Virus record (IMG/VR): IMGVR_UViG_3300022935_000005
Span: 216,914-280,913 of that record
DNA length: 64,000 nucleotides
Reading direction: 5' to 3' (one strand)
Shown: positions 3,952 through 64,000 of the stretch, in pieces
Layout: each line of letters starts with the position of its first letter
How positions within the stretch are numbered: the stretch's first letter is position 1
Notes under the pieces: model-generated
The model's database searches: none
The model's input: only the letters and a program-made list of their open reading frames with translations
Told to the model about the DNA's origin: nothing
Position numbers and translations under genes: made by a program

Positions 3952-5846
3952 GCGGTGGGATCTTCGTACCATTCTTCCATGAATGATTCACCGGTGATTT
4001 CTTCTAGTCTTCTGATCATTTTTTCCATATTGATTTTTACAACTTTACCAGTTTTGACATTTCTAGAAAAATACTGCCACTCACCTTCTTCGTTGTGAGG
4101 GGATATTTGCGTAACATTGCCTGCTTCGTCTCTTACAAAAACTTCAGCAGAAGAAGCAACGTCTTTGGAGTAAATGTGAGCGTAATTGGTTACAGTGCTA
4201 GGATCACTTGTTGCTTGCATCGCAATTCTGCCATCAATCTCTAAATCTCCTAAAAACCTAGAATTACCTTTTACATCTAGTTCAGCACTTGGGTTGCTAG
4301 TTCCAATTCCCACACTTCCGGAAGTGTTAAAATGAATAGTACTCGACACATCACTTCCTAGTGTTGCTTCAGACACAATCGATGCATCACCACCTAAAGT
4401 GCCATGATATCCTCCGACATAATCTTTTATTCCATCTTGACCTGTGGTGTCAATGTGGTCTCCCATTTTCCACCAGTGGACTAAATCACTGTATGCAGAG
4501 TACTCTTCCATGTTCTTTACATTTCCGTCGTTGTAAAGTTCTTGAACTTCTGTGGGAGTAAGTACGCGATTAAACCTACACACATCTGCTAATTTACCAG
4601 CGAGCGCATTACTTGTTGAGTCGTTAACATCGATGCCGCCTAAAGTTGTTGGTATTGAGGTTTGAGGCATCCCGGAATAGTTCGTTGAGGTTTGTGTTGT
4701 GAAATATATTAGGTTGGGTACGTTCAAATCATTATTGATTGATGATCCACCGCCTCCCTCATAAATACTTCCATTCCCAACTGGATGTGAGTTCTTATAA
4801 ACTCTTATTCCGGACGTCGCTTTGCTTCCATCGTAAGTAACACAAAGATGAAACCAAGTATTTTCTGCGTGGAAAAATTTACTATTTGCAGAGGTTTGGG
4901 CTACCGCTATCCTGTTTGATGTACTAAAGGTTCCAACACCGTTTTGATCTGGGTCTGCATATAAAATAATTTGTAGCAGACCGCTTCCAACCCCAATATA
5001 AATTTCGCCATCATTAGGTGAAGTAGACCTTTTTGTATATAACCCACCTGCATGCTTCCCGTTTGTTCCATCGTAGTCTATCTCTTCTAGATTGACCCAC
5101 ATAGAAATAGTGAATGCTTTGTCAGTGCCCTGGCCAGAACTAAATGAAGTGTCTGTTGTAGCATCAGAAATAGTTACTTCATCAAACGGAGAGAGTCCGT
5201 CGAGCTGAATTGCCTTCTGGTTTACTAATGAGTCTGATTTTATTTGCACAGACCCAGTGACGCTAAAACTTCCTGTCACAAATGTATTACCTTGAAGTTT
5301 TGAAGTACCTTCTACATGAAGCACGTCAGTTGGCGTTGACGTTCCAATTCCGACTTTATCGTTCGCACCATCAACATAAAGCATATGTGTGTTGTTGTCT
5401 GACTCAACTCGAAAGTTAACTAGCGAGTCTGATGTTTGGTTAACGACAACCTCTGGAACAGCACCATCCAATCGCAATCCTTCACGGGAAGTTCCTGCGT
5501 CACTTGCTTTAAAAACGATATGTTTGTTTGAGTATAGGTTTTCAATTAGGATATTATTTGATGAATTGATCCCAATCAGAGCTCGATCACTATCATCTTC
5601 GGTAAATCTAATGAACGTTTCGTCACTCTGTCCTTCAACTCCGTTTATAGTGAGTTTCTCTGACGGAGTCTCGGTACCGATGCCTACATTCCCATGATCG
5701 TCGATGATAGCTCTTTCCGAACCGTTCGTTGAGAATCTAATTTTATTTTCATTAGGGTTCTGTTCAACTTCTACCTTCGTGTCTCCATCTTTATCTTCTA
5801 GGGTGTCCTCAGTGATGGCACCGGCTCTAATTTTGGTAATTGGCAT
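3948..5846 (-). CDS. Tail-fibre/virion-like protein with LamG (concanavalin-like) domain
   Basis: Repeated GNVGIGTxTP beta-helix units, FTISMWV...WFHLCVTYDG...LADVCRFNRVLT LamG signature; AGGAGG RBS and ATATTTA box upstream. Confidence 0.7.
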   Translation of the reverse strand: MPITKIRAGAITEDTLEDKDGDTKVEVEQNPNENKIRFSTNGSERAIIDDHGNVGIGTETPSEKLTINGVEGQSDETFIRFTEDDSDRALIGINSSNNILIENLYSNKHIVFKASDAGTSREGLRLDGAVPEVVVNQTSDSLVNFRVESDNNTHMLYVDGANDKVGIGTSTPTDVLHVEGTSKLQGNTFVTGSFSVTGSVQIKSDSLVNQKAIQLDGLSPFDEVTISDATTDTSFSSGQGTDKAFTISMWVNLEEIDYDGTNGKHAGGLYTKRSTSPNDGEIYIGVGSGLLQIILYADPDQNGVGTFSTSNRIAVAQTSANSKFFHAENTWFHLCVTYDGSKATSGIRVYKNSHPVGNGSIYEGGGGSSINNDLNVPNLIYFTTQTSTNYSGMPQTSIPTTLGGIDVNDSTSNALAGKLADVCRFNRVLTPTEVQELYNDGNVKNMEEYSAYSDLVHWWKMGDHIDTTGQDGIKDYVGGYHGTLGGDASIVSEATLGSDVSSTIHFNTSGSVGIGTSNPSAELDVKGNSRFLGDLEIDGRIAMQATSDPSTVTNYAHIYSKDVASSAEVFVRDEAGNVTQISPHNEEGEWQYFSRNVKTGKVVKINMEKMIRRLEEITGESFMEEWYEDPTA

Positions 5847-59464: not shown

Positions 59465-60616
59465 ATGACTTATGCACAAGAGCTTCTCATAAAGGAGCAC
59501 ATAGAATTATTTGAAACCCGTGTTCAGTTGAGAAAACCCATGCATCATATCCCTATGGTGTACACTGTCCAGGAAGGAGTTGTTGACGACGCGCTTGAAG
59601 CTCTGGCAACGGCAGGTGAAGGTGCGATTCTAAATATCGTCCAATGGGCAGTAGCAGGCGCCGCTGAATACGGATTGGTCGCAACTGGTGCCGGAGCTCC
59701 AGCTGCACCCTTCGCAGAAACCTTAATTGATGTAGGGTTCACTGCGGGTGACCTTGCTAGTGCAACCTCTTCAATGGCATCTATTCAAACGAATTTCTCA
59801 GAATTCTCGAAAATGATAGGTGACGCAATAGAAAGTTATGGTGAAAGCTGGTCTGCTTTCTACAAAAAGGTTCGAAAAATCATCCGTGAAGGCTTGAGAG
59901 CTCTTGGTAAAGGCGCGACAGGAAAAGTAGATGAGCTAGCGGAGAAACTAAAAAAGGGACTCAAGAATATCCTCAAGAAGTTGAACCGTACAATTGGCAA
60001 CCTCATTCAGGCTATTATACCAGATGCGACTATAGGGGCAACAGTTGCTACCGCGATTGAAACCTTACTGACTGGATTGACACAAAGTCCTTTCAGCGCT
60101 GTCACAAGTACCATGGGTAAAATACCAGTAGTCAAAGATCTCATTCTTGAACCTGCTAAGTTTGTACAATTCTTCAAAGACGGGTTTCAGTCACTTATCA
60201 AAGGCATCATTGCATTAGGTAAGAAAATTGATGCAGGCGGTTTCATGGAAAAAGCTGCACTGGCTACCGTGAGTCCAATCCTTGGAGCTCTCGCCGCTGC
60301 CGGCGCTGTGGGCAAAGGACTCGAGTGGATTGCTAAGAATGTCATCGAGCCAGTTATTGAACCGGCGACGAAAGTGATCACACAAATCCTCGAAGTTGTA
60401 ATGCCTACCGTGATGTCACTCCTCGCAGTATATCAGATACTAGTAAAAGGTGAATACAAAGAGCAAAAAGTTACAAGCGAAAGCAGAAAGCTGCGCGCCT
60501 CTGACATTGAGTTTGCTTACGTTGACAACCTGATAGAGCAAAGGGTCAAATTGTATGAGCAGGCAAAAATCGATTTGTCGCTAAACACAAAAAGTCTCTC
60601 TGCTTTTATTGCGTAA
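59465..60616 (+). CDS. Ala/Gly-rich helical hypothetical protein with hydrophobic hairpins
   Basis: AVAGAAEYGLVATGAGAPAAP, ALATVSPILGALAAAGAVG; long amphipathic helices. Confidence 0.6.
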   Translation: MTYAQELLIKEHIELFETRVQLRKPMHHIPMVYTVQEGVVDDALEALATAGEGAILNIVQWAVAGAAEYGLVATGAGAPAAPFAETLIDVGFTAGDLASATSSMASIQTNFSEFSKMIGDAIESYGESWSAFYKKVRKIIREGLRALGKGATGKVDELAEKLKKGLKNILKKLNRTIGNLIQAIIPDATIGATVATAIETLLTGLTQSPFSAVTSTMGKIPVVKDLILEPAKFVQFFKDGFQSLIKGIIALGKKIDAGGFMEKAALATVSPILGALAAAGAVGKGLEWIAKNVIEPVIEPATKVITQILEVVMPTVMSLLAVYQILVKGEYKEQKVTSESRKLRASDIEFAYVDNLIEQRVKLYEQAKIDLSLNTKSLSAFIA

Positions 60617-60698
60617 AGAGTGAAAGTCGGTGAAACCTCACAAAGCACCGCACAAAGCACCTTGAACAACGCTCTCACCTGAGTTACAATAATTCAAC

Positions 60699-60814
60699 AG
60701 GAGTGAGGCGGTATTACGCAGGGTTCTACTGAGACAATAAACGACCCGGGCCGAGGAATAAGAGTCTAACAAAGGAATACTCGGTCACTTGCAGGTGAGA
60801 ACCCTGCCACTCCT
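60699..60814 (+). ncRNA. Structured RNA motif A, copy 1
   Basis: AGGAGTG/CACTCCT, GCAGGGTTCT/AGAACCCTGC and GGCCGAG/CTCGGTC stems; TTGAAC-N17-TACAAT promoter directly upstream and T-run downstream; second copy at 63189. Confidence 0.75.
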
Positions 60815-60877
60815 TCTTTTTTGGTATATCTATATGCTGCGCTCGATATATTTATCTTTACGATCTGGAGGACAATA

Positions 60878-61156
60878 ATGAAAATCACAAAAAGACAGCT
60901 TAGAGGGATTATCAGAGAAGCTATGCAGCCCGGCGGAATGGCTGTACGTTTGCAAACAAATAAGCTGGTGAAAGCGGGTCTTGCAGATTTTTCAGGACCT
61001 ATCGAGTACAAGAGTCCACAAAATTTTGTCATTAGAGACGTAGAGAAATCCAAAGTGCCTGAATTCATTAGCTGGATCGAGGAAATCGATTCAATGATGC
61101 GCCATGAAGAACCAGGATCCGCGCCTCACTTGGTAGACTTGCATTACGGAGTGTAG
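60878..61156 (+). CDS. MKITK-leader protein, dispersed member
   Basis: MKITKRQLRGIIREA; ATATTTA at 60848 and GGAGG RBS. Confidence 0.75.
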   Translation: MKITKRQLRGIIREAMQPGGMAVRLQTNKLVKAGLADFSGPIEYKSPQNFVIRDVEKSKVPEFISWIEEIDSMMRHEEPGSAPHLVDLHYGV

Positions 61157-61157
61157 A

Positions 61158-61382
61158 ATGAAAATCACAAAGCGACAACTAAGAAGAATTATTAGAGAAG
61201 CTACTGTATCCCCTAAGTTACCCAATCCAGATCCTCACTATGAAGATGGATGGAATGACGCTATTGTGTACGGTGAACCTAGACAAACTCCCACTCATCC
61301 ACCCAAAGCCGTTGATGCGTATTGGGACGGTTATCAAGATGGTGAAGATCATGCACGAAGGTCCGAAGAGCCTCTTCATTAA
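61158..61382 (+). CDS. MKITK-leader protein, dispersed member
   Basis: MKITKRQLRRIIREA; body Y.DGW.D...Y.DGY.DG. Confidence 0.75.
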   Translation: MKITKRQLRRIIREATVSPKLPNPDPHYEDGWNDAIVYGEPRQTPTHPPKAVDAYWDGYQDGEDHARRSEEPLH

Positions 61383-61444
61383 ACAAACCTCTCCAAAAAC
61401 ACTCCTCTCTTGTAAATACATCTACTCCCATAATACAATTCTAT

Positions 61445-61513
61445 AAATGAAGTTACCCCGATCGTAGCGGGTGGGACTGGAAACAGTCAGTTAGGTGGTC
61501 TGGTTGCCTAACA
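61445..61513 (+). ncRNA. Structured RNA motif B, copy 1
   Basis: ACCCCG/CGGGT, GACTG-GAAA-CAGTC and GTTAGG/CCTAAC hairpins plus T-run; TTGTAA-N18-TACAAT upstream. Confidence 0.7.
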
Positions 61514-61597
61514 TTTTTAATTTAGTTGCTTTTTATGAGCAAAACGCCCACTCGGAGTAGGCACTATGACACATAAAAGTAACTTGCGGAGAAGAGA

Positions 61598-62182
61598 ATG
61601 ACTGACGAAATCAAAGAACTCAAAAAGCAAGTAGAAGAACTCAAAAAAGAGAATACAGAGCTACAACGAGAGTTATCAGTTCATAATTTTCTTGATACTG
61701 GCGTTCCACAGGAGCGACTTGATTATCAGCGAGAGTTAAAAAAAGAACTAAACGAATTTCGTTATCTCTACGGAAGTGTTCTTTCTCGCATAAACAAGTT
61801 GGAAGACGACACAAGAGCAGCGATAGAGTTTGCCGACCTCGCAGAAGACGATAGGGGAACTGAAATGATCTTGAAGTTCTGCGACGACATTACAAAGTTG
61901 GTTGGAGAATAAAGAATGAAAAGCAACCACTCTTATAATGCTGGTTATCACAGAGGACTAAACACAGAATACCACGATGTTCCTATTGAAGAACTCTTTG
62001 CTAAATGGATTGCCGATGTTCGCAGACCAGCATCAGCAGAAGCATTTGACCCTGTTGCTTTTGAGAAAGGTTATAACGACGGCAAAGACGACTATCTATG
62101 CGGTGGCAACACACCAGAAAGAGTTGAAGAACAGATAGAGTGGTTGAAGAAACTTGCGGAGAAAGAAAATGAACAACATTGA
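61598..62182 (+). CDS. Two hypothetical ORFs (61598-61912 coiled coil; 61916-62182)
   Basis: A-rich ORFs with GGAG RBSs. Confidence 0.55.
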
Positions 62183-62747
62183 GGACATTAAAAACAAATG
62201 GGAGAACACAAGGCTCCTAGAAGAACTACCAGAAGACGAGCAATATTCTATGAGTCAATTGTTAGAAAATGAAGCAAGACATATTCTATCTACTTACCAA
62301 GATGTAAATGAAAGTCAATTAGCATACATTTGTTTTCCTTTAATTCGCAGGATATTCCAATCATCAGGTTTTTTTGAAGAAGGTGATTGCCCACTCACTT
62401 TCACATACGAAACAAGTGTTCTTCCCGCATTTACCTACTTCAAGCCAGACGAAGAAGAAGCAAGTGTTGCAATAACTCAGGTTTATGATTTTGAATCCTC
62501 GCCAAACAAAGAAGTGGTTGAGGAAATTTGCTCCAATAGGTATTATGCTCTGGATGCGGAAGTTGGACTAACAGCAGAACTCGCTGAAAGATTCAGAAAC
62601 GAACTTAACGAGAAACACAAAGGAAAACATCTTATTTTTGGAGATCCAATTATGATGAGAGAAGAAGACGGCGAAAGGATTTATTCTTATCGTTGTGCGG
62701 TTTTACCGGGAGGTTCAAGATTACACGAAGGAGGATATAAAGAATGA
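62169..62747 (+). CDS. Protein resembling the N-terminal part of a T4 gp23-type major capsid protein (truncated paralog)
   Basis: KWENTRLLEEL...MSQLLENEARHIL...FPLIRRIF. Confidence 0.6.
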   Translation: MNNIEDIKNKWENTRLLEELPEDEQYSMSQLLENEARHILSTYQDVNESQLAYICFPLIRRIFQSSGFFEEGDCPLTFTYETSVLPAFTYFKPDEEEASVAITQVYDFESSPNKEVVEEICSNRYYALDAEVGLTAELAERFRNELNEKHKGKHLIFGDPIMMREEDGERIYSYRCAVLPGGSRLHEGGYKE

Positions 62748-63180
62748 ACAACATTGAGATTCTATATCAAGAATGCAAAGTGTGTGGAAAAACATTCAAA
62801 CTTCCAACTCGTAAAGAACTGGAAAAATCAATTTTATTCAAGGCTGCCGAGGCTCTCGGAATTGATATGGGAAATGGTTATACAGGCGGGAATAGTTTAT
62901 TGGCGATGTTGAACTGTTCTGTTGAGTGTGCGAGAAAACTGGAGAGCGAAGAGTGAAAGTCGGTGATCTGGTAAAAGCAAAGCACAAATACTCTAAAAAC
63001 GAAGTAGGGATTGGGATAGTACTCAAAGTAGAAGAAAACTTCTACAAAACCTATAATGATTACTTTGAAGACCGATTGACTATTCACTGGGCACACGGGG
63101 AGACAACTTTGGAACCAGATAGTTATGTTGAGAAAATAAGTGGAACAAAATGTCAACATTTGCTCCCAGATGGAGTATAA
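62744..63180 (+). CDS. Zn-finger ORF (62744-62956) and KVGDLV barrel ORF (62953-63180)
   Basis: CKVC...CSVEC; MKVGDLVKAKHK. Confidence 0.6.
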
Positions 63181-63188
63181 TTGTAACA

Positions 63189-63308
63189 AATAGAGTGAGG
63201 CGGTATTACGCAGGGTTCTACTGAGATGATATACGACCCGGACCAAGGAATAAGAGTCTTAAAAGGGAATACTTGGTCGCTTGCAGGTAAAAATCCTGCC
63301 ACTCTATT
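63189..63308 (+). ncRNA. Structured RNA motif A, copy 2
   Basis: AATAGAGTG/CACTCTATT and GACCAAG/CTTGGTC stems, compensatory relative to copy 1; TATAAT at 63176-63181. Confidence 0.75.
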
Positions 63309-63311
63309 ATA

Positions 63312-63422
63312 AAATGAAGTTACCCCGATTGTAAGGATGAAGCGGGAGAGGGATAAACTCCATGATTGCTAATCTGCGGGTGGGACTGGAAACAGTCAGT
63401 TAGGTGGTCTGGTTGCCTAACA
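63312..63422 (+). ncRNA. Structured RNA motif B, copy 2, with a 42-nt insertion
   Basis: Nearly identical to copy 1 except insert 63334-63375 in the first hairpin loop. Confidence 0.7.
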
Positions 63423-63443
63423 CCTTTTTAGGGAGAGCGAAGA

Positions 63444-63533
63444 ATGAAAGTCGGTGATCTGGTAAAAGCAAATCACAAAATCGGCGCGGCTAATATCAAA
63501 AAACGCTACAAGATGACGAGCGGTCAAGCTTAA
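63444..63533 (+). pseudogene. Truncated copy of the 62953 gene start
   Basis: 41-bp near-identity 62941-62981 vs 63432-63472 (one mismatch at the start codon), then divergence and a stop after 29 aa. Confidence 0.6.
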
Positions 63534-64000
63534 AGGAAGAGACAGCGCCACTATAACGAGAGACGCATCATCTACTATAAGAACATACACCTCAGCTCAC
63601 ACTCACGATCACGCTTCTGTTATACAAGAATAGAGTAGTATATCAGCGCTCTCTGCTCTCTGTCTCCCAGCTCTCTGCCCACTCTAACACCAAAAAACAC
63701 TCACTAACACCCATTAACACCCATTTACACTCGGGTATCCCTCTTGGGTCGTGACAGGTGGCTATTCCTCCATGTGTCCTGGCTCGTAGGGGGCAGTTTT
63801 TCTGTTGCTCCCTCTGGTCACATTCCACGAGGAGTTATTTCTGTGTTGAGATTTTTTCTCTCGGCTAAGTACATATACGAGCCGATGTACACAAGTAAAT
63901 GAGTTTAATAGAAAAAAAGTAGATTTACACGAATTTCATGTGCGAATACAAAACTTTTACAATTCTCTTCGAGAACCCGCGTTTCCAACTGTTCTCGCGT

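What the first reader, a model, noticed from the sequence alone, without database searches (positions are those of the whole stretch)
61445..63422. Structured RNA motif B: three-hairpin sRNA with a length-variable stem
Seen: two near-identical copies (61445-61513 and 63312-63422) made of an ACCCCG/CGGGT hairpin, a GACTG-GAAA-CAGTC GNRA hairpin, and a GTTAGG/CCTAAC hairpin followed by a T-run. Copy 2 has a 42-nt insert exactly in the first loop, and the insert can itself fold (AGC-GGAG...CTCC-GCT). Copy 1 has its own promoter, while copy 2 lies 3 nt after motif A copy 2. Inference: an independent sRNA that may work together with motif A, since the A-B order is kept at both loci. The insert could also be a small excisable element.
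Basis: partly seen in the sequence, partly recalled or inferred. Interest (0 to 1): 0.72.

Follow-up and report, generated by a model that had tools for sequence, protein, structure and literature searches.

The report
Conserved three-hairpin phage small RNA
Motif B is a real, roughly 74-base three-hairpin RNA element, conserved in one or two copies per genome in uncultured giant T4-like phages. It sits just behind a promoter or a tRNA-like RNA and ends in a terminator; it is absent from the RNA databases and its function is still unknown.

Summary
Two copies lie at 61445-61518 (short) and 63312-63427 (42 extra bases in the first hairpin loop), each with three hairpins and a T-run.

The window is the last 64 kb of a 281-kb T4-like phage contig, and these are the only two copies in it. 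A covariance model finds the element in about 43 related IMG/VR contigs, one per large contig. Compensatory changes occur in all 5 pairs of hairpin 2 and 8 of 9 pairs of hairpin 3. The 5' tail, hairpin 1 and a GGUUG loop motif are nearly invariant. No Rfam family matches.

Near-consensus sigma-70 promoters place the transcription start on its first bases. Otherwise it follows the tRNA-like motif A by 3-10 nt, or a stop codon. Downstream genes differ (ORFans, thyX), so it does not regulate one gene. Word depth in metatranscriptome contigs is 4-6 times the neighbouring gene at B and 4-16 times at A, against about 2 times in a DNA run.

The 42-nt insert occurs only inside B and stays in RNA contigs, so it is not excisable.

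In one phage the same element sits inside a genuine tmRNA.

Best reading: a small stable RNA module that also serves as the leader of the cassette behind it. Its mechanism is unresolved.

The parts
61410..61439 (+). Sigma-70-like promoter of B copy 1 (TTGTAA-18-TACAAT). The predicted start falls on the AAA at 61445-61447.
   Evidence: Relatives L032, L055, L068, L127, L138, L167 and L173 have near-consensus TTGACA-17-TATAAT-type promoters exactly 6 nt before AAATGAAG.
61445..61518 (+). Motif B copy 1, short form: 5' tail 61445-61452, P1 61453-61474, P2 61475-61488, P3 61490-61512, T-run 61514-61518.
   Evidence: (101.8 bits).
63312..63429 (+). Motif B copy 2, long form: tail 63312-63319, P1 63320-63383, P2 63384-63397, P3 63399-63421, ACC spacer, T-run 63425-63429.
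   Evidence: (94.2 bits).
63334..63375 (+). 42-nt expansion of the P1 loop. It folds as an imperfect extension of P1.
   Evidence: Found only inside B in IMG/VR. Retained in RNA-library contigs, with no skip joint.
60697..60815 (+). Motif A copy 1, a tRNA-like cloverleaf. It starts at the predicted transcription start of promoter 60662-60690. Here it is followed by a T-run and two small genes rather than by B.
63189..63307 (+). Motif A copy 2, behind promoter 63153-63181. B copy 2 follows 4 nt later.
63432..63533 (+). Shine-Dalgarno sequence plus a short 29-codon ORF directly behind B copy 2. Its first 48 nt repeat the start of the gene at 62941-63180.
   Evidence: (repeat family D2).
61519..61597 (+). 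79-nt spacer between B copy 1 and the start codon at 61598. It is conserved in L104 and contains further small hairpins.

Best explanation
Motif B is a conserved structured RNA module of a lineage of uncultured T4-like jumbo phages, present in one or two copies per genome.

The core is about 74 nt and has these parts:
- An invariant single-stranded 5' tail, AAAUGAAG.
- P1 (UUACCC(C)G with CGGGUGG), whose loop tolerates expansions.
- An optional 5-bp P2.
- P3, a covarying stem with an invariant G/U-rich GGUUG loop.

Shown by sequence analysis: it is transcribed on the gene strand. Transcription starts either at its own sigma-70-type promoter, with the start on the first A's, or as the immediate 3' extension of the tRNA-like RNA A, or behind a stop codon.

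Inferred:
- In this clade P3 plus the U-run acts as a leaky intrinsic terminator. A small stable RNA of about 74 or 116 nt accumulates (or A-B together), while read-through RNA carries the downstream ORFan cassette.
- The RNA's function is independent of the downstream gene.
- The invariant tail, the GGGUGG segment and the GGUUG loop are probably contact surfaces for a conserved partner: a protein, the ribosome, or another RNA.
- At the DNA level its edges serve as recombination junctions that swap the cassettes behind it.
For: - Structure: P2 and P3 covary, and unpaired parts are invariant.
- Strand: a block of conserved G-U pairs is readable only on the + strand.
- Copy number: 2 in this 281-kb contig and exactly 1 in each of five relatives of 88-233 kb.
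- Promoters are positioned so that the start falls on the first bases of B in at least 7 loci.
- A terminator-like P3 with a T-run is present in the window and in most clades.
- The downstream genes are unrelated: coiled-coil ORFans, a zinc-finger-like ORF, ThyX and others. The upstream context also varies: promoter, motif A, or the stop codon of an Hsp20-like gene, named from its C-terminal sequence only.
- RNA-library contigs: word depth over B copy 2 is 4-6 times the upstream gene in three salt-marsh metatranscriptomes, against 2.3 times in a DNA run. Over motif A copy 2 it is 4-16 times against 2.0. Depth falls after the T-run.
- Words of the A-B unit occur in at least 14 RNA libraries.
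- Joints in other strains lie exactly at the 3' edge of B (61513, 63428) and link it to other genes.
- The same module is embedded in a genuine phage tmRNA in L328. This shows it is a self-contained RNA fold and not just a terminator.
Against: - There is no direct mapping of RNA ends. The runs are held only as unstranded contigs, and DNA carry-over in the RNA libraries cannot be excluded.
- In most of the loci examined B lies 7-18 nt before a Shine-Dalgarno sequence and start codon. In other loci the gap is about 58-200 nt; window copy 1 has 79 nt. The tight spacing fits a cis-acting leader equally well.
- Several clades lack the U-run (the thyX clade, L167/L173, L328). B cannot be released by termination there.
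- P3 is AU-rich at its base and is often separated from the U-run by ACC, so it would be a weak terminator.
- No partner or target is known.
Confidence: 0.5

Rival explanations
1. B is purely a cis-acting 5' leader or attenuator. It gates or stabilises transcription and translation of the cassette immediately downstream, for example by early termination relieved later in infection, by protecting the mRNA, or as a put/nut-like element. It would have no function as a free RNA.
For: - It is always co-oriented with a gene. In most of the loci examined it lies 7-18 nt upstream of that gene's Shine-Dalgarno sequence and start codon.
- It sits directly behind promoters.
- In L167/L173 and the thyX clade there is no terminator, so B must be part of the mRNA.
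Against: - There are only 1-2 copies per genome of 200-300 kb with many promoters.
- The downstream genes are unrelated between clades.
- B also occurs 110 nt from the transcription start behind motif A, behind stop codons, and inside a tmRNA.
- No conserved alternative pairing (anti-terminator) was found; candidate pairings did not covary.
Confidence: 0.25
2. B is only a transcription terminator plus a patch of homology that is kept similar by recombination, like PeSL cassettes. The RNA itself would have no function.
For: - P3 with a T-run is picked up by the terminator scan.
- Half-elements (P3 plus T-run) are fused to the end of an ORF in L083.
- Recombinant joints lie at the edges of B.
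- PeSL precedent: PMC4122927.
Against: - The 5' tail and P1 are conserved across clades in which P2, P3 and all flanking genes have diverged.
- P2 covaries although it plays no part in a terminator.
- The P3 loop motif GGUUG is invariant while the stem changes.
- Several clades have no U-run.
- Copy number is 1-2, whereas PeSL elements occur as a series spread through a genome's hyperplastic regions.
Confidence: 0.07
3. B is a free-standing descendant of the last pseudoknot domain of a phage tmRNA. It would be either a relic of a decayed tmRNA gene or a domain that still contacts the ribosome or the trans-translation machinery.
For: - In L328 a full B (57 bits with model R2, 32 bits for the tail-plus-P1 model R3) lies inside an RF00023 tmRNA with tag ANDNVEFDYALAA. 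It sits in the slot just 5' of helix 2 and the T-arm.
- Three related phage tmRNAs have weakly B-like sequence in their pseudoknot region: L345/L357 in the same slot (13 bits) and L353 further upstream (12.6 bits). L351 looks similar by eye.
- B's neighbours are tRNA-type RNAs: motif A, and the tRNA cluster in L082.
Against: - Only one tmRNA case is statistically solid.
- Most of the sister tmRNAs found by the tag scan (tags ANDNV...) give no B match or only a weak one.
- No tmRNA was found in this phage.
- There was no hit in 156 bacterial genomes, which is a weak test.
- The direction of transfer is unknown: B may have been captured by the tmRNA.
Confidence: 0.1
4. B encodes a leaderless micro-peptide (MKLPRL) whose translation controls folding of P1, in the manner of leader-peptide attenuation.
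For: - AUG AAG is invariant at the extreme 5' end.
- In most variants a stop codon lies in the P1 loop.
- The predicted transcription start is 0-2 nt before the AUG.
Against: - The peptide is not conserved: MKIP-stop, MKLPLL, and 9-25-codon read-throughs occur.
- The only variable base in the tail is a first codon position, with no third-position variation.
- There is no Shine-Dalgarno sequence when B lies behind motif A or behind a gene.
- The homologous second module in the thyX clade reads AUG-UGA.
Confidence: 0.04
5. B is an RNA anti-CRISPR, that is, a mimic of a single CRISPR repeat. The 33 nt from GUUACCCC to GGAAAC look repeat-like.
For: From memory only: the stretch resembles type I-C or I-E repeats, with a stem-loop followed by a handle ending in GAAAC. 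It also has its own promoter and terminator.
Against: - A scan of 185,579 species genomes with a 17-mer spanning the supposed handle gave 73 single hits, about the chance number. None was in an array and none was B-like.
- The supposed handle is hairpin P2, which covaries and even disappears in relatives.
Confidence: 0.02

Closest known systems
Phage T4 RNAC and RNAD (species 1 and 2 stable RNAs)
   Same: They are small stable RNAs of a T4-type phage, encoded in tandem a few bases apart beside tRNA genes. RNAC carries a canonical T-arm and is tRNA-like, as motif A is. Their functions are unknown (PMC3014915, PMC9697503). In L082 the A-B unit lies inside the tRNA cluster.
   Different: No sequence or structure homology is detectable. 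Model R1 gives nothing at rnaD, and local alignments are no better than shuffles. In this phage A-B lies about 62 kb from the tRNA cluster. A and B have their own sigma-70-type promoters, and B is followed by protein genes.
PeSL promoter/stem-loop cassettes of T4-like phages (PMC2839356, PMC4122927)
   Same: Both are conserved non-coding cassettes containing a sigma-70-like early promoter, hairpin(s), a Shine-Dalgarno sequence and a start codon, found in hyperplastic regions. Both sit at indel and cassette-exchange junctions (joints).
   Different: In PeSL the stem-loop lies upstream of the promoter, and a series of copies is spread through a genome's hyperplastic regions. B lies downstream of the promoter and has three hairpins with covariation and invariant loops. 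It occurs once or twice per genome.
tmRNA pseudoknot domain (last pseudoknot, before helix 2 and the T-arm)
   Same: In L328 a full B element occupies exactly this slot of an RF00023 tmRNA.
   Different: The window copies are free-standing and this phage has no tmRNA. A pseudoknot pairing could not be demonstrated. Most sister tmRNAs lack a significant match.
sRNAs derived from tRNA 3' trailers (E. coli 3'ETS-leuZ; from general knowledge, not tested here)
   Same: It is a short RNA lying between a tRNA-type gene and an intrinsic terminator, and could be released by processing of the precursor. This matches the A-B arrangement.
   Different: B also has its own promoter in many loci. No processing or target data exist. 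Motif A is not a recognised tRNA (ARAGORN and Rfam are negative).
Promoter-proximal leader RNAs of lambdoid phages (HK022 put, lambda nut, the 6S leader with tR'; from general knowledge)
   Same: They are adjacent hairpins immediately downstream of a promoter and upstream of a terminator. P2 resembles boxB in form, with 5 bp and a GNRA-type loop.
   Different: B also functions 110 nt from the transcription start, behind stop codons and inside a tmRNA. P2 and its GAAA loop are dispensable in relatives. Nothing in Rfam matched the region.

Membership tests
Any Rfam 15 family | Covariance-model score at or above the curated gathering threshold | tested here: not met
   No hit in the whole window at the gathering threshold. 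No hit at E<=10 in 60600-64000. Nothing over A or B in related loci.
Intrinsic (Rho-independent) terminator | Stable hairpin followed within 0-2 nt by a U-run | tested here: met
   P3 with a T-run is listed for both window copies. The stem has only 3 G-C pairs. In copy 2 an ACC spacer precedes the U-run.
Intrinsic (Rho-independent) terminator | The element is nothing more than the terminator (no conserved 5' part) | tested here: not met
   The tail, P1 and P2 are conserved or covary. The U-run is absent in the thyX clade, L167/L173 and L328, while P3 is kept.
PeSL cassette | Stem-loop located upstream of the early promoter | tested here: not met
   All three hairpins lie downstream of the -10 box. 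PeSL layout is as described in PMC4122927.
PeSL cassette | A series of copies spread through the hyperplastic regions of a genome | tested here: not met
   2 copies in 281 kb. 1 copy in each of five contigs of 88-233 kb.
PeSL cassette | Lies at recombination or indel junctions between strains | tested here: met
   Joints at 61513 and 63428 link B to other genes in other strains. Different genes follow B in different contigs.
T4 RNAC/RNAD | Sequence or structure homology to rnaC or rnaD | tested here: not met
   R1 search of the T4 tRNA region with filters off found nothing at rnaD or rnaC. Local alignments were matched by 447 and 351 of 3000 shuffles.
T4 RNAC/RNAD | Tandem small RNAs next to the phage tRNA cluster | tested here: inconclusive
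   True in L082, where tRNA genes lie on both sides. In this phage the cluster is about 62 kb upstream.
tmRNA pseudoknot domain | Located inside a tmRNA between the tag reading frame and helix 2/T-arm | tested here: not met
   Met only for L328. The window copies are free-standing, and no tmRNA was found in the phage.
tmRNA pseudoknot domain | H-type pseudoknot pairing of a hairpin loop with flanking sequence | tested here: inconclusive
   Checked by eye. The candidate AACCA:UGGUU pairing is seen in L328 only. No partner for the GGUUG loop exists in copies that start at the promoter.
RNA anti-CRISPR (solitary repeat mimic) | Matches a CRISPR repeat that occurs in arrays | tested here: not met
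   A 17-mer scan of genome contigs gave 73 single hits, about the chance number, with no arrays.
Trans-acting terminator-ended sRNA | Own promoter, intrinsic terminator, and a conserved single-stranded segment | tested here: met
   This rests on sequence only; the RNA ends were not mapped.
Trans-acting terminator-ended sRNA | Conserved complementarity to target mRNAs | not testable with these tools
   The host is unknown. Within the phage, matches to the complement of the tail are few, and the exact 11-nt match lies inside an ORF rather than at a start site.
Leader-peptide attenuator | Conserved translatable short ORF with a ribosome-binding signal | tested here: not met
   The peptide varies in length and sequence. 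No consistent Shine-Dalgarno sequence is present.
Mobile or excisable insert (the 42-nt segment) | Occurs at other sites, or is removed from the RNA | tested here: not met
   14 of 14 IMG/VR occurrences lie inside B. An RNA contig spans it unchanged and no skip joint appears.
tRNA / tmRNA gene (B itself) | Called by ARAGORN or by the Rfam tRNA or tmRNA models | tested here: not met

The most novel reading that the evidence does not exclude
A and B together are a previously undescribed pair of phage stable RNAs derived from the translation-RNA toolkit. A is a tRNA-like cloverleaf with the acceptor stem of the phage's tRNA-Pro type. B is a portable domain that can also serve as the last pseudoknot module of a phage tmRNA. 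Together they would act on the host translation or RNA-processing machinery, as a decoy or as a ribosome- or nuclease-binding RNA. This would make them the functional counterpart of the unexplained T4 RNAC/RNAD pair.
Probability: 0.15. Interest if true: 0.8.

Novelty: new member of a known kind. Interest (0 to 1): 0.6.

Why it matters
A 2010 review (PMC3014915) noted that no riboswitch or trans-acting small RNA had been functionally characterised in T4. A 2022 study (PMC9697503) still lists the roles of T4's two stable RNAs as unknown.

B, with its partner A, gives a comparative handle that T4 never offered. There are dozens of diverged copies with clear covariation, invariant loops that point to contact surfaces, and evidence of abundance in metatranscriptome contigs. 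One member is built into a tmRNA.

If B proves to be a functional small RNA, it defines a new RNA family for jumbo T4-like phages of estuarine and marine habitats. It would also offer a testable link between phage tRNA-like RNAs, tmRNA domains and host takeover.

B also marks the exact points at which these phages swap ORFan cassettes.

Tried and rejected
- Rfam at gathering and permissive thresholds, and ARAGORN, gave nothing for B.
- blastn against 50,697 cultured phage records gave no relative. The only hits were 32-36-nt chance matches.
- T4 rnaC/rnaD homology was rejected.
- CRISPR-repeat mimic was rejected.
- Integron attC: P3 reads GTTAGGT...GCCTAAC, which matches the core and inverse-core words. 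They are in the wrong order, and other family members lack them. Rejected from the sequence itself.
- Insert as a partial tandem duplication of the P1-3'/P2 segment: the alignment score was only marginal (64 of 2000 shuffles as good). Left as a weak idea.
- Alternative or anti-terminator pairings and an A-B pairing: UUACC with the GGUGG of P3, and GGGUG with the CACCU tail, are not conserved across variants. RNAalifold shows A and B as independent modules.
- sRNA target search inside the phage: one 11-nt complement of the tail lies within an ORF, and one 11-nt complement of P1 lies in a 5' UTR at the genome start. Both are within chance expectation.
- Replication-origin idea: GC skew is positive along the whole contig, so it is uninformative.
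- Search for a tag-like reading frame or tmRNA remnants in this phage found nothing convincing.
- A scan for further B elements lying 60-90 nt upstream of a T-arm found only L328 and chance hits beside tRNAs.
- Model R2 found nothing in 156 bacterial genomes. This is a weak test because of the filters.
- Complex prediction, structure prediction and the metagenome-contig scan were not used, because no protein partner or further sampling question required them.
Full report
**What is there.** Copy 1 spans 61445-61518 and copy 2 spans 63312-63427. Their 5' 22 nt are 95% identical and their 3' 52 nt are 96% identical. Copy 2 has exactly 42 extra bases (63334-63375) in the loop of the first hairpin.

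Each copy has these parts:
- an 8-nt tail, AAAUGAAG
- P1 (UUACCCCG with CGGGUGG)
- P2 (a 5-bp stem with a GAAA loop)
- one unpaired base
- P3 (six Watson-Crick pairs topped by three G-U pairs)
- a T-run

Thermodynamic folding alone is not better than shuffled sequence (z -1.3 and -0.4). The case rests on comparison with relatives.

**The genome.** The window is the last 64 kb of a 280,913-bp IMG/VR virus contig. The phage encodes a Gp23-type capsid protein. Its nearest cultured relatives are distant T4-like myoviruses, at 36-51% identity. It has no psbA. Almost the whole contig has positive GC skew. A tRNA cluster lies just upstream of the window. A and B each occur only twice in the contig, all within its last 3.3 kb.

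**Relatives.** Exact-word scans of IMG/VR followed by a covariance model (R1) recover B in about 43 contigs. Five large relatives of 88-233 kb hold exactly one copy each.

On a broad alignment of 23 distinct sequences, 96.6% of cells are paired. All 5 pairs of P2 and 8 of 9 pairs of P3 show compensatory changes, and no shuffle of 500 reaches the observed values.

Conservation across the family:
- P1 is nearly invariant. So are the tail and a GGUUG motif in the P3 loop, although the P3 stem changes completely (GUUAGG, GGCGAG, GAUAGA, GUCAAGC, GGUAAG and others).
- P2 can lose its GAAA loop or be absent.
- The P1 loop exists in three forms: 7 nt, +42 nt, and a different hairpin of about 30 nt in L096.

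So it is a real variable-length stem.

No Rfam family matches. Nothing similar exists in 50,697 cultured phage records. A 17-mer spanning the end of P1 and the start of P2 found no B-like sequence in the genomes of 185,579 prokaryote species.

**Context.**
- In at least seven loci a near-consensus sigma-70 promoter ends exactly 6 nt before AAATGAAG, so the conserved 5' end is the predicted transcript start. Window copy 1 has a weaker version at 61410-61439.
- In most other main-clade loci B follows motif A by 3-10 nt, and A itself begins at the predicted start of such a promoter.
- In divergent clades B follows the stop codon of an upstream gene. In two contigs that gene is Hsp20-like, judged from its C-terminal sequence only. 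In another clade B lies in the 5' region of thyX.
- In the loci examined, the first gene behind B usually starts 7-18 nt after it. The genes are unrelated to one another.
- A U-run, often after ACC, follows P3 in most clades. It is missing in the thyX clade, in L167/L173 and in L328.

**Expression and population data.** Only unstranded assembler contigs could be laid on the region. The table gives summed word depth as a multiple of the preceding gene.

| Region | X1 (RNA) | X15 (RNA) | X22 (RNA) | X2 (DNA) |
|---|---|---|---|---|
| A copy 2 | 7.6 | 4.4 | 16 | 2.0 |
| B copy 2 | 5.9 | 4.7 | 4.0 | 2.3 |

Depth drops behind the T-run. This is suggestive, not proof. Depths sum over strains, and DNA carry-over into the RNA libraries is possible.

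Words of the A-B unit occur in at least 14 RNA libraries from salt marsh, seawater, sediment and other aquatic samples.

Contigs from other strains join the 3' edge of B (61513, 63428) to different genes. Others show A running directly into B where this phage has two inserted genes. The edges of the module are therefore recombination junctions.

**The insert.** All 14 IMG/VR occurrences of the 42-nt segment lie inside B. It folds as an imperfect extension of P1. One of its two variable positions changes G-U to A-U within that extension. An RNA-library contig spans it unchanged, and no 42-nt skip appears. It is an expansion segment, not an excisable element.

**Motif A and the tmRNA lead.** RNAalifold folds A as a class-II-like cloverleaf with covariation, independent of B. 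Its arms are:
- a 7-bp acceptor-like stem
- a short D-like arm
- a 5-bp arm with a 17-nt loop
- a long extra arm
- a 5-bp arm with a 7-nt loop

The acceptor sequence matches that of a phage tRNA-Pro in L082. In L097 and L104 the last arm is a canonical T-arm.

Unexpectedly, in L328 a full B element lies inside a bona fide tmRNA, in the slot of the last pseudoknot:
- B scores 49-57 bits with R1 and R2, and 32 bits for the tail-plus-P1 model.
- The tmRNA has the ARAGORN tag ANDNVEFDYALAA and scores 79.5 bits against RF00023.

Sister phage tmRNAs are at best weakly B-like, at 12.6-13.1 bits, and one by eye. A further scan found no more cases.

This shows that B is a self-contained RNA fold that works outside a terminator context. 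It also hints at a link to the tRNA/tmRNA gene set. It does not establish which came first.

**Interpretation.** Several features argue for an RNA with its own function rather than a regulator of one gene or a bare terminator:
- low copy number
- conservation across clades with changing neighbours
- promoter and terminator signals
- invariant unpaired segments
- apparent RNA abundance

Tight coupling to the next start codon in most loci, and the terminator-less clades, keep a cis-acting leader role alive. Both roles may hold.

The closest known analogues are the unexplained T4 RNAC/RNAD pair, with no homology to B, and PeSL cassettes, which differ in layout and copy number.

The alternatives tested and set aside are listed under Tried and rejected: a CRISPR-repeat mimic, attC, a leader peptide, anti-terminator pairings and a replication origin.

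**Verdict.** B is a new RNA family of a known general kind (a phage small structured RNA or leader). Its mechanism is unresolved, and I rate interest at 0.6.

Noticed in passing
window 60697-60815 and 63189-63307: Motif A folds as a tRNA-like class-II cloverleaf with covariation in three stems. Its acceptor stem equals that of a phage tRNA-Pro(UGG) in L082. Its last arm is a canonical T-arm in L097 and L104. It begins at the predicted start of a sigma-70-type promoter. ARAGORN and Rfam do not call it.
   Followed up: partly
L328:4917-5275 (B at 5153-5214): A phage tmRNA (tag ANDNVEFDYALAA, RF00023 79.5 bits) carries a full B element in the slot of its last pseudoknot. Related phage tmRNAs are only weakly similar there.
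   Followed up: partly
L359:3411-3601, 4021-4219, 4669-4853 (G000 about 212910-214352, just upstream of the window): There are three Rfam group I intron matches (70, 63 and 49 bits; the last is just under the 50-bit threshold). Each is followed by a T-arm, acceptor strand and CCA. These are apparently three intron-containing tRNA genes that ARAGORN missed.
   Followed up: partly
window 61519-61597: The 79-nt stretch between B copy 1 and the next start codon is conserved in L104 and contains further small hairpins. Other B copies lack it.
   Followed up: no
window 62941-62988 versus 63432-63479, and 63534-64000: The Shine-Dalgarno sequence and first codons of the gene at 62954 are repeated (96%) behind B copy 2, where only a 29-codon ORF follows. 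The last 470 nt of the contig hold only short ORFs of at most about 60 aa. Part of this tail (about 63640-63740) is C/T-rich with ACACCC-like repeats.
   Followed up: no
L082 (upstream of A) and L179:2866-2975: A tRNA 5' half (acceptor, D-arm and the start of the anticodon stem) is fused directly upstream of motif A. In L179 the 5' end of B is joined to the same tRNA fragment through a CGTAGC microhomology. These are traces of illegitimate recombination among the RNA genes.
   Followed up: partly
L109, L123, L132, L137, L177 (downstream of B): In the thyX clade a second, B-tail-like module lies between B and the thyX ribosome-binding site. It consists of AUGUGAAGAUUUUGCCC followed by a hairpin.
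   Followed up: no
window 60878-61156 and 61158-61382: Two tandem paralogous small genes both start MKITKRQLR. Contigs from other strains skip one of them (joint 60871 to 61158). The whole two-gene block sits exactly at the A|B boundary that is uninterrupted in relatives.
   Followed up: no
L083:5776-5954: Only the 3' end of P2 plus P3 and the T-run survive here, fused to the 3' end of a protein-coding ORF. This is a half-element left by recombination.
   Followed up: no
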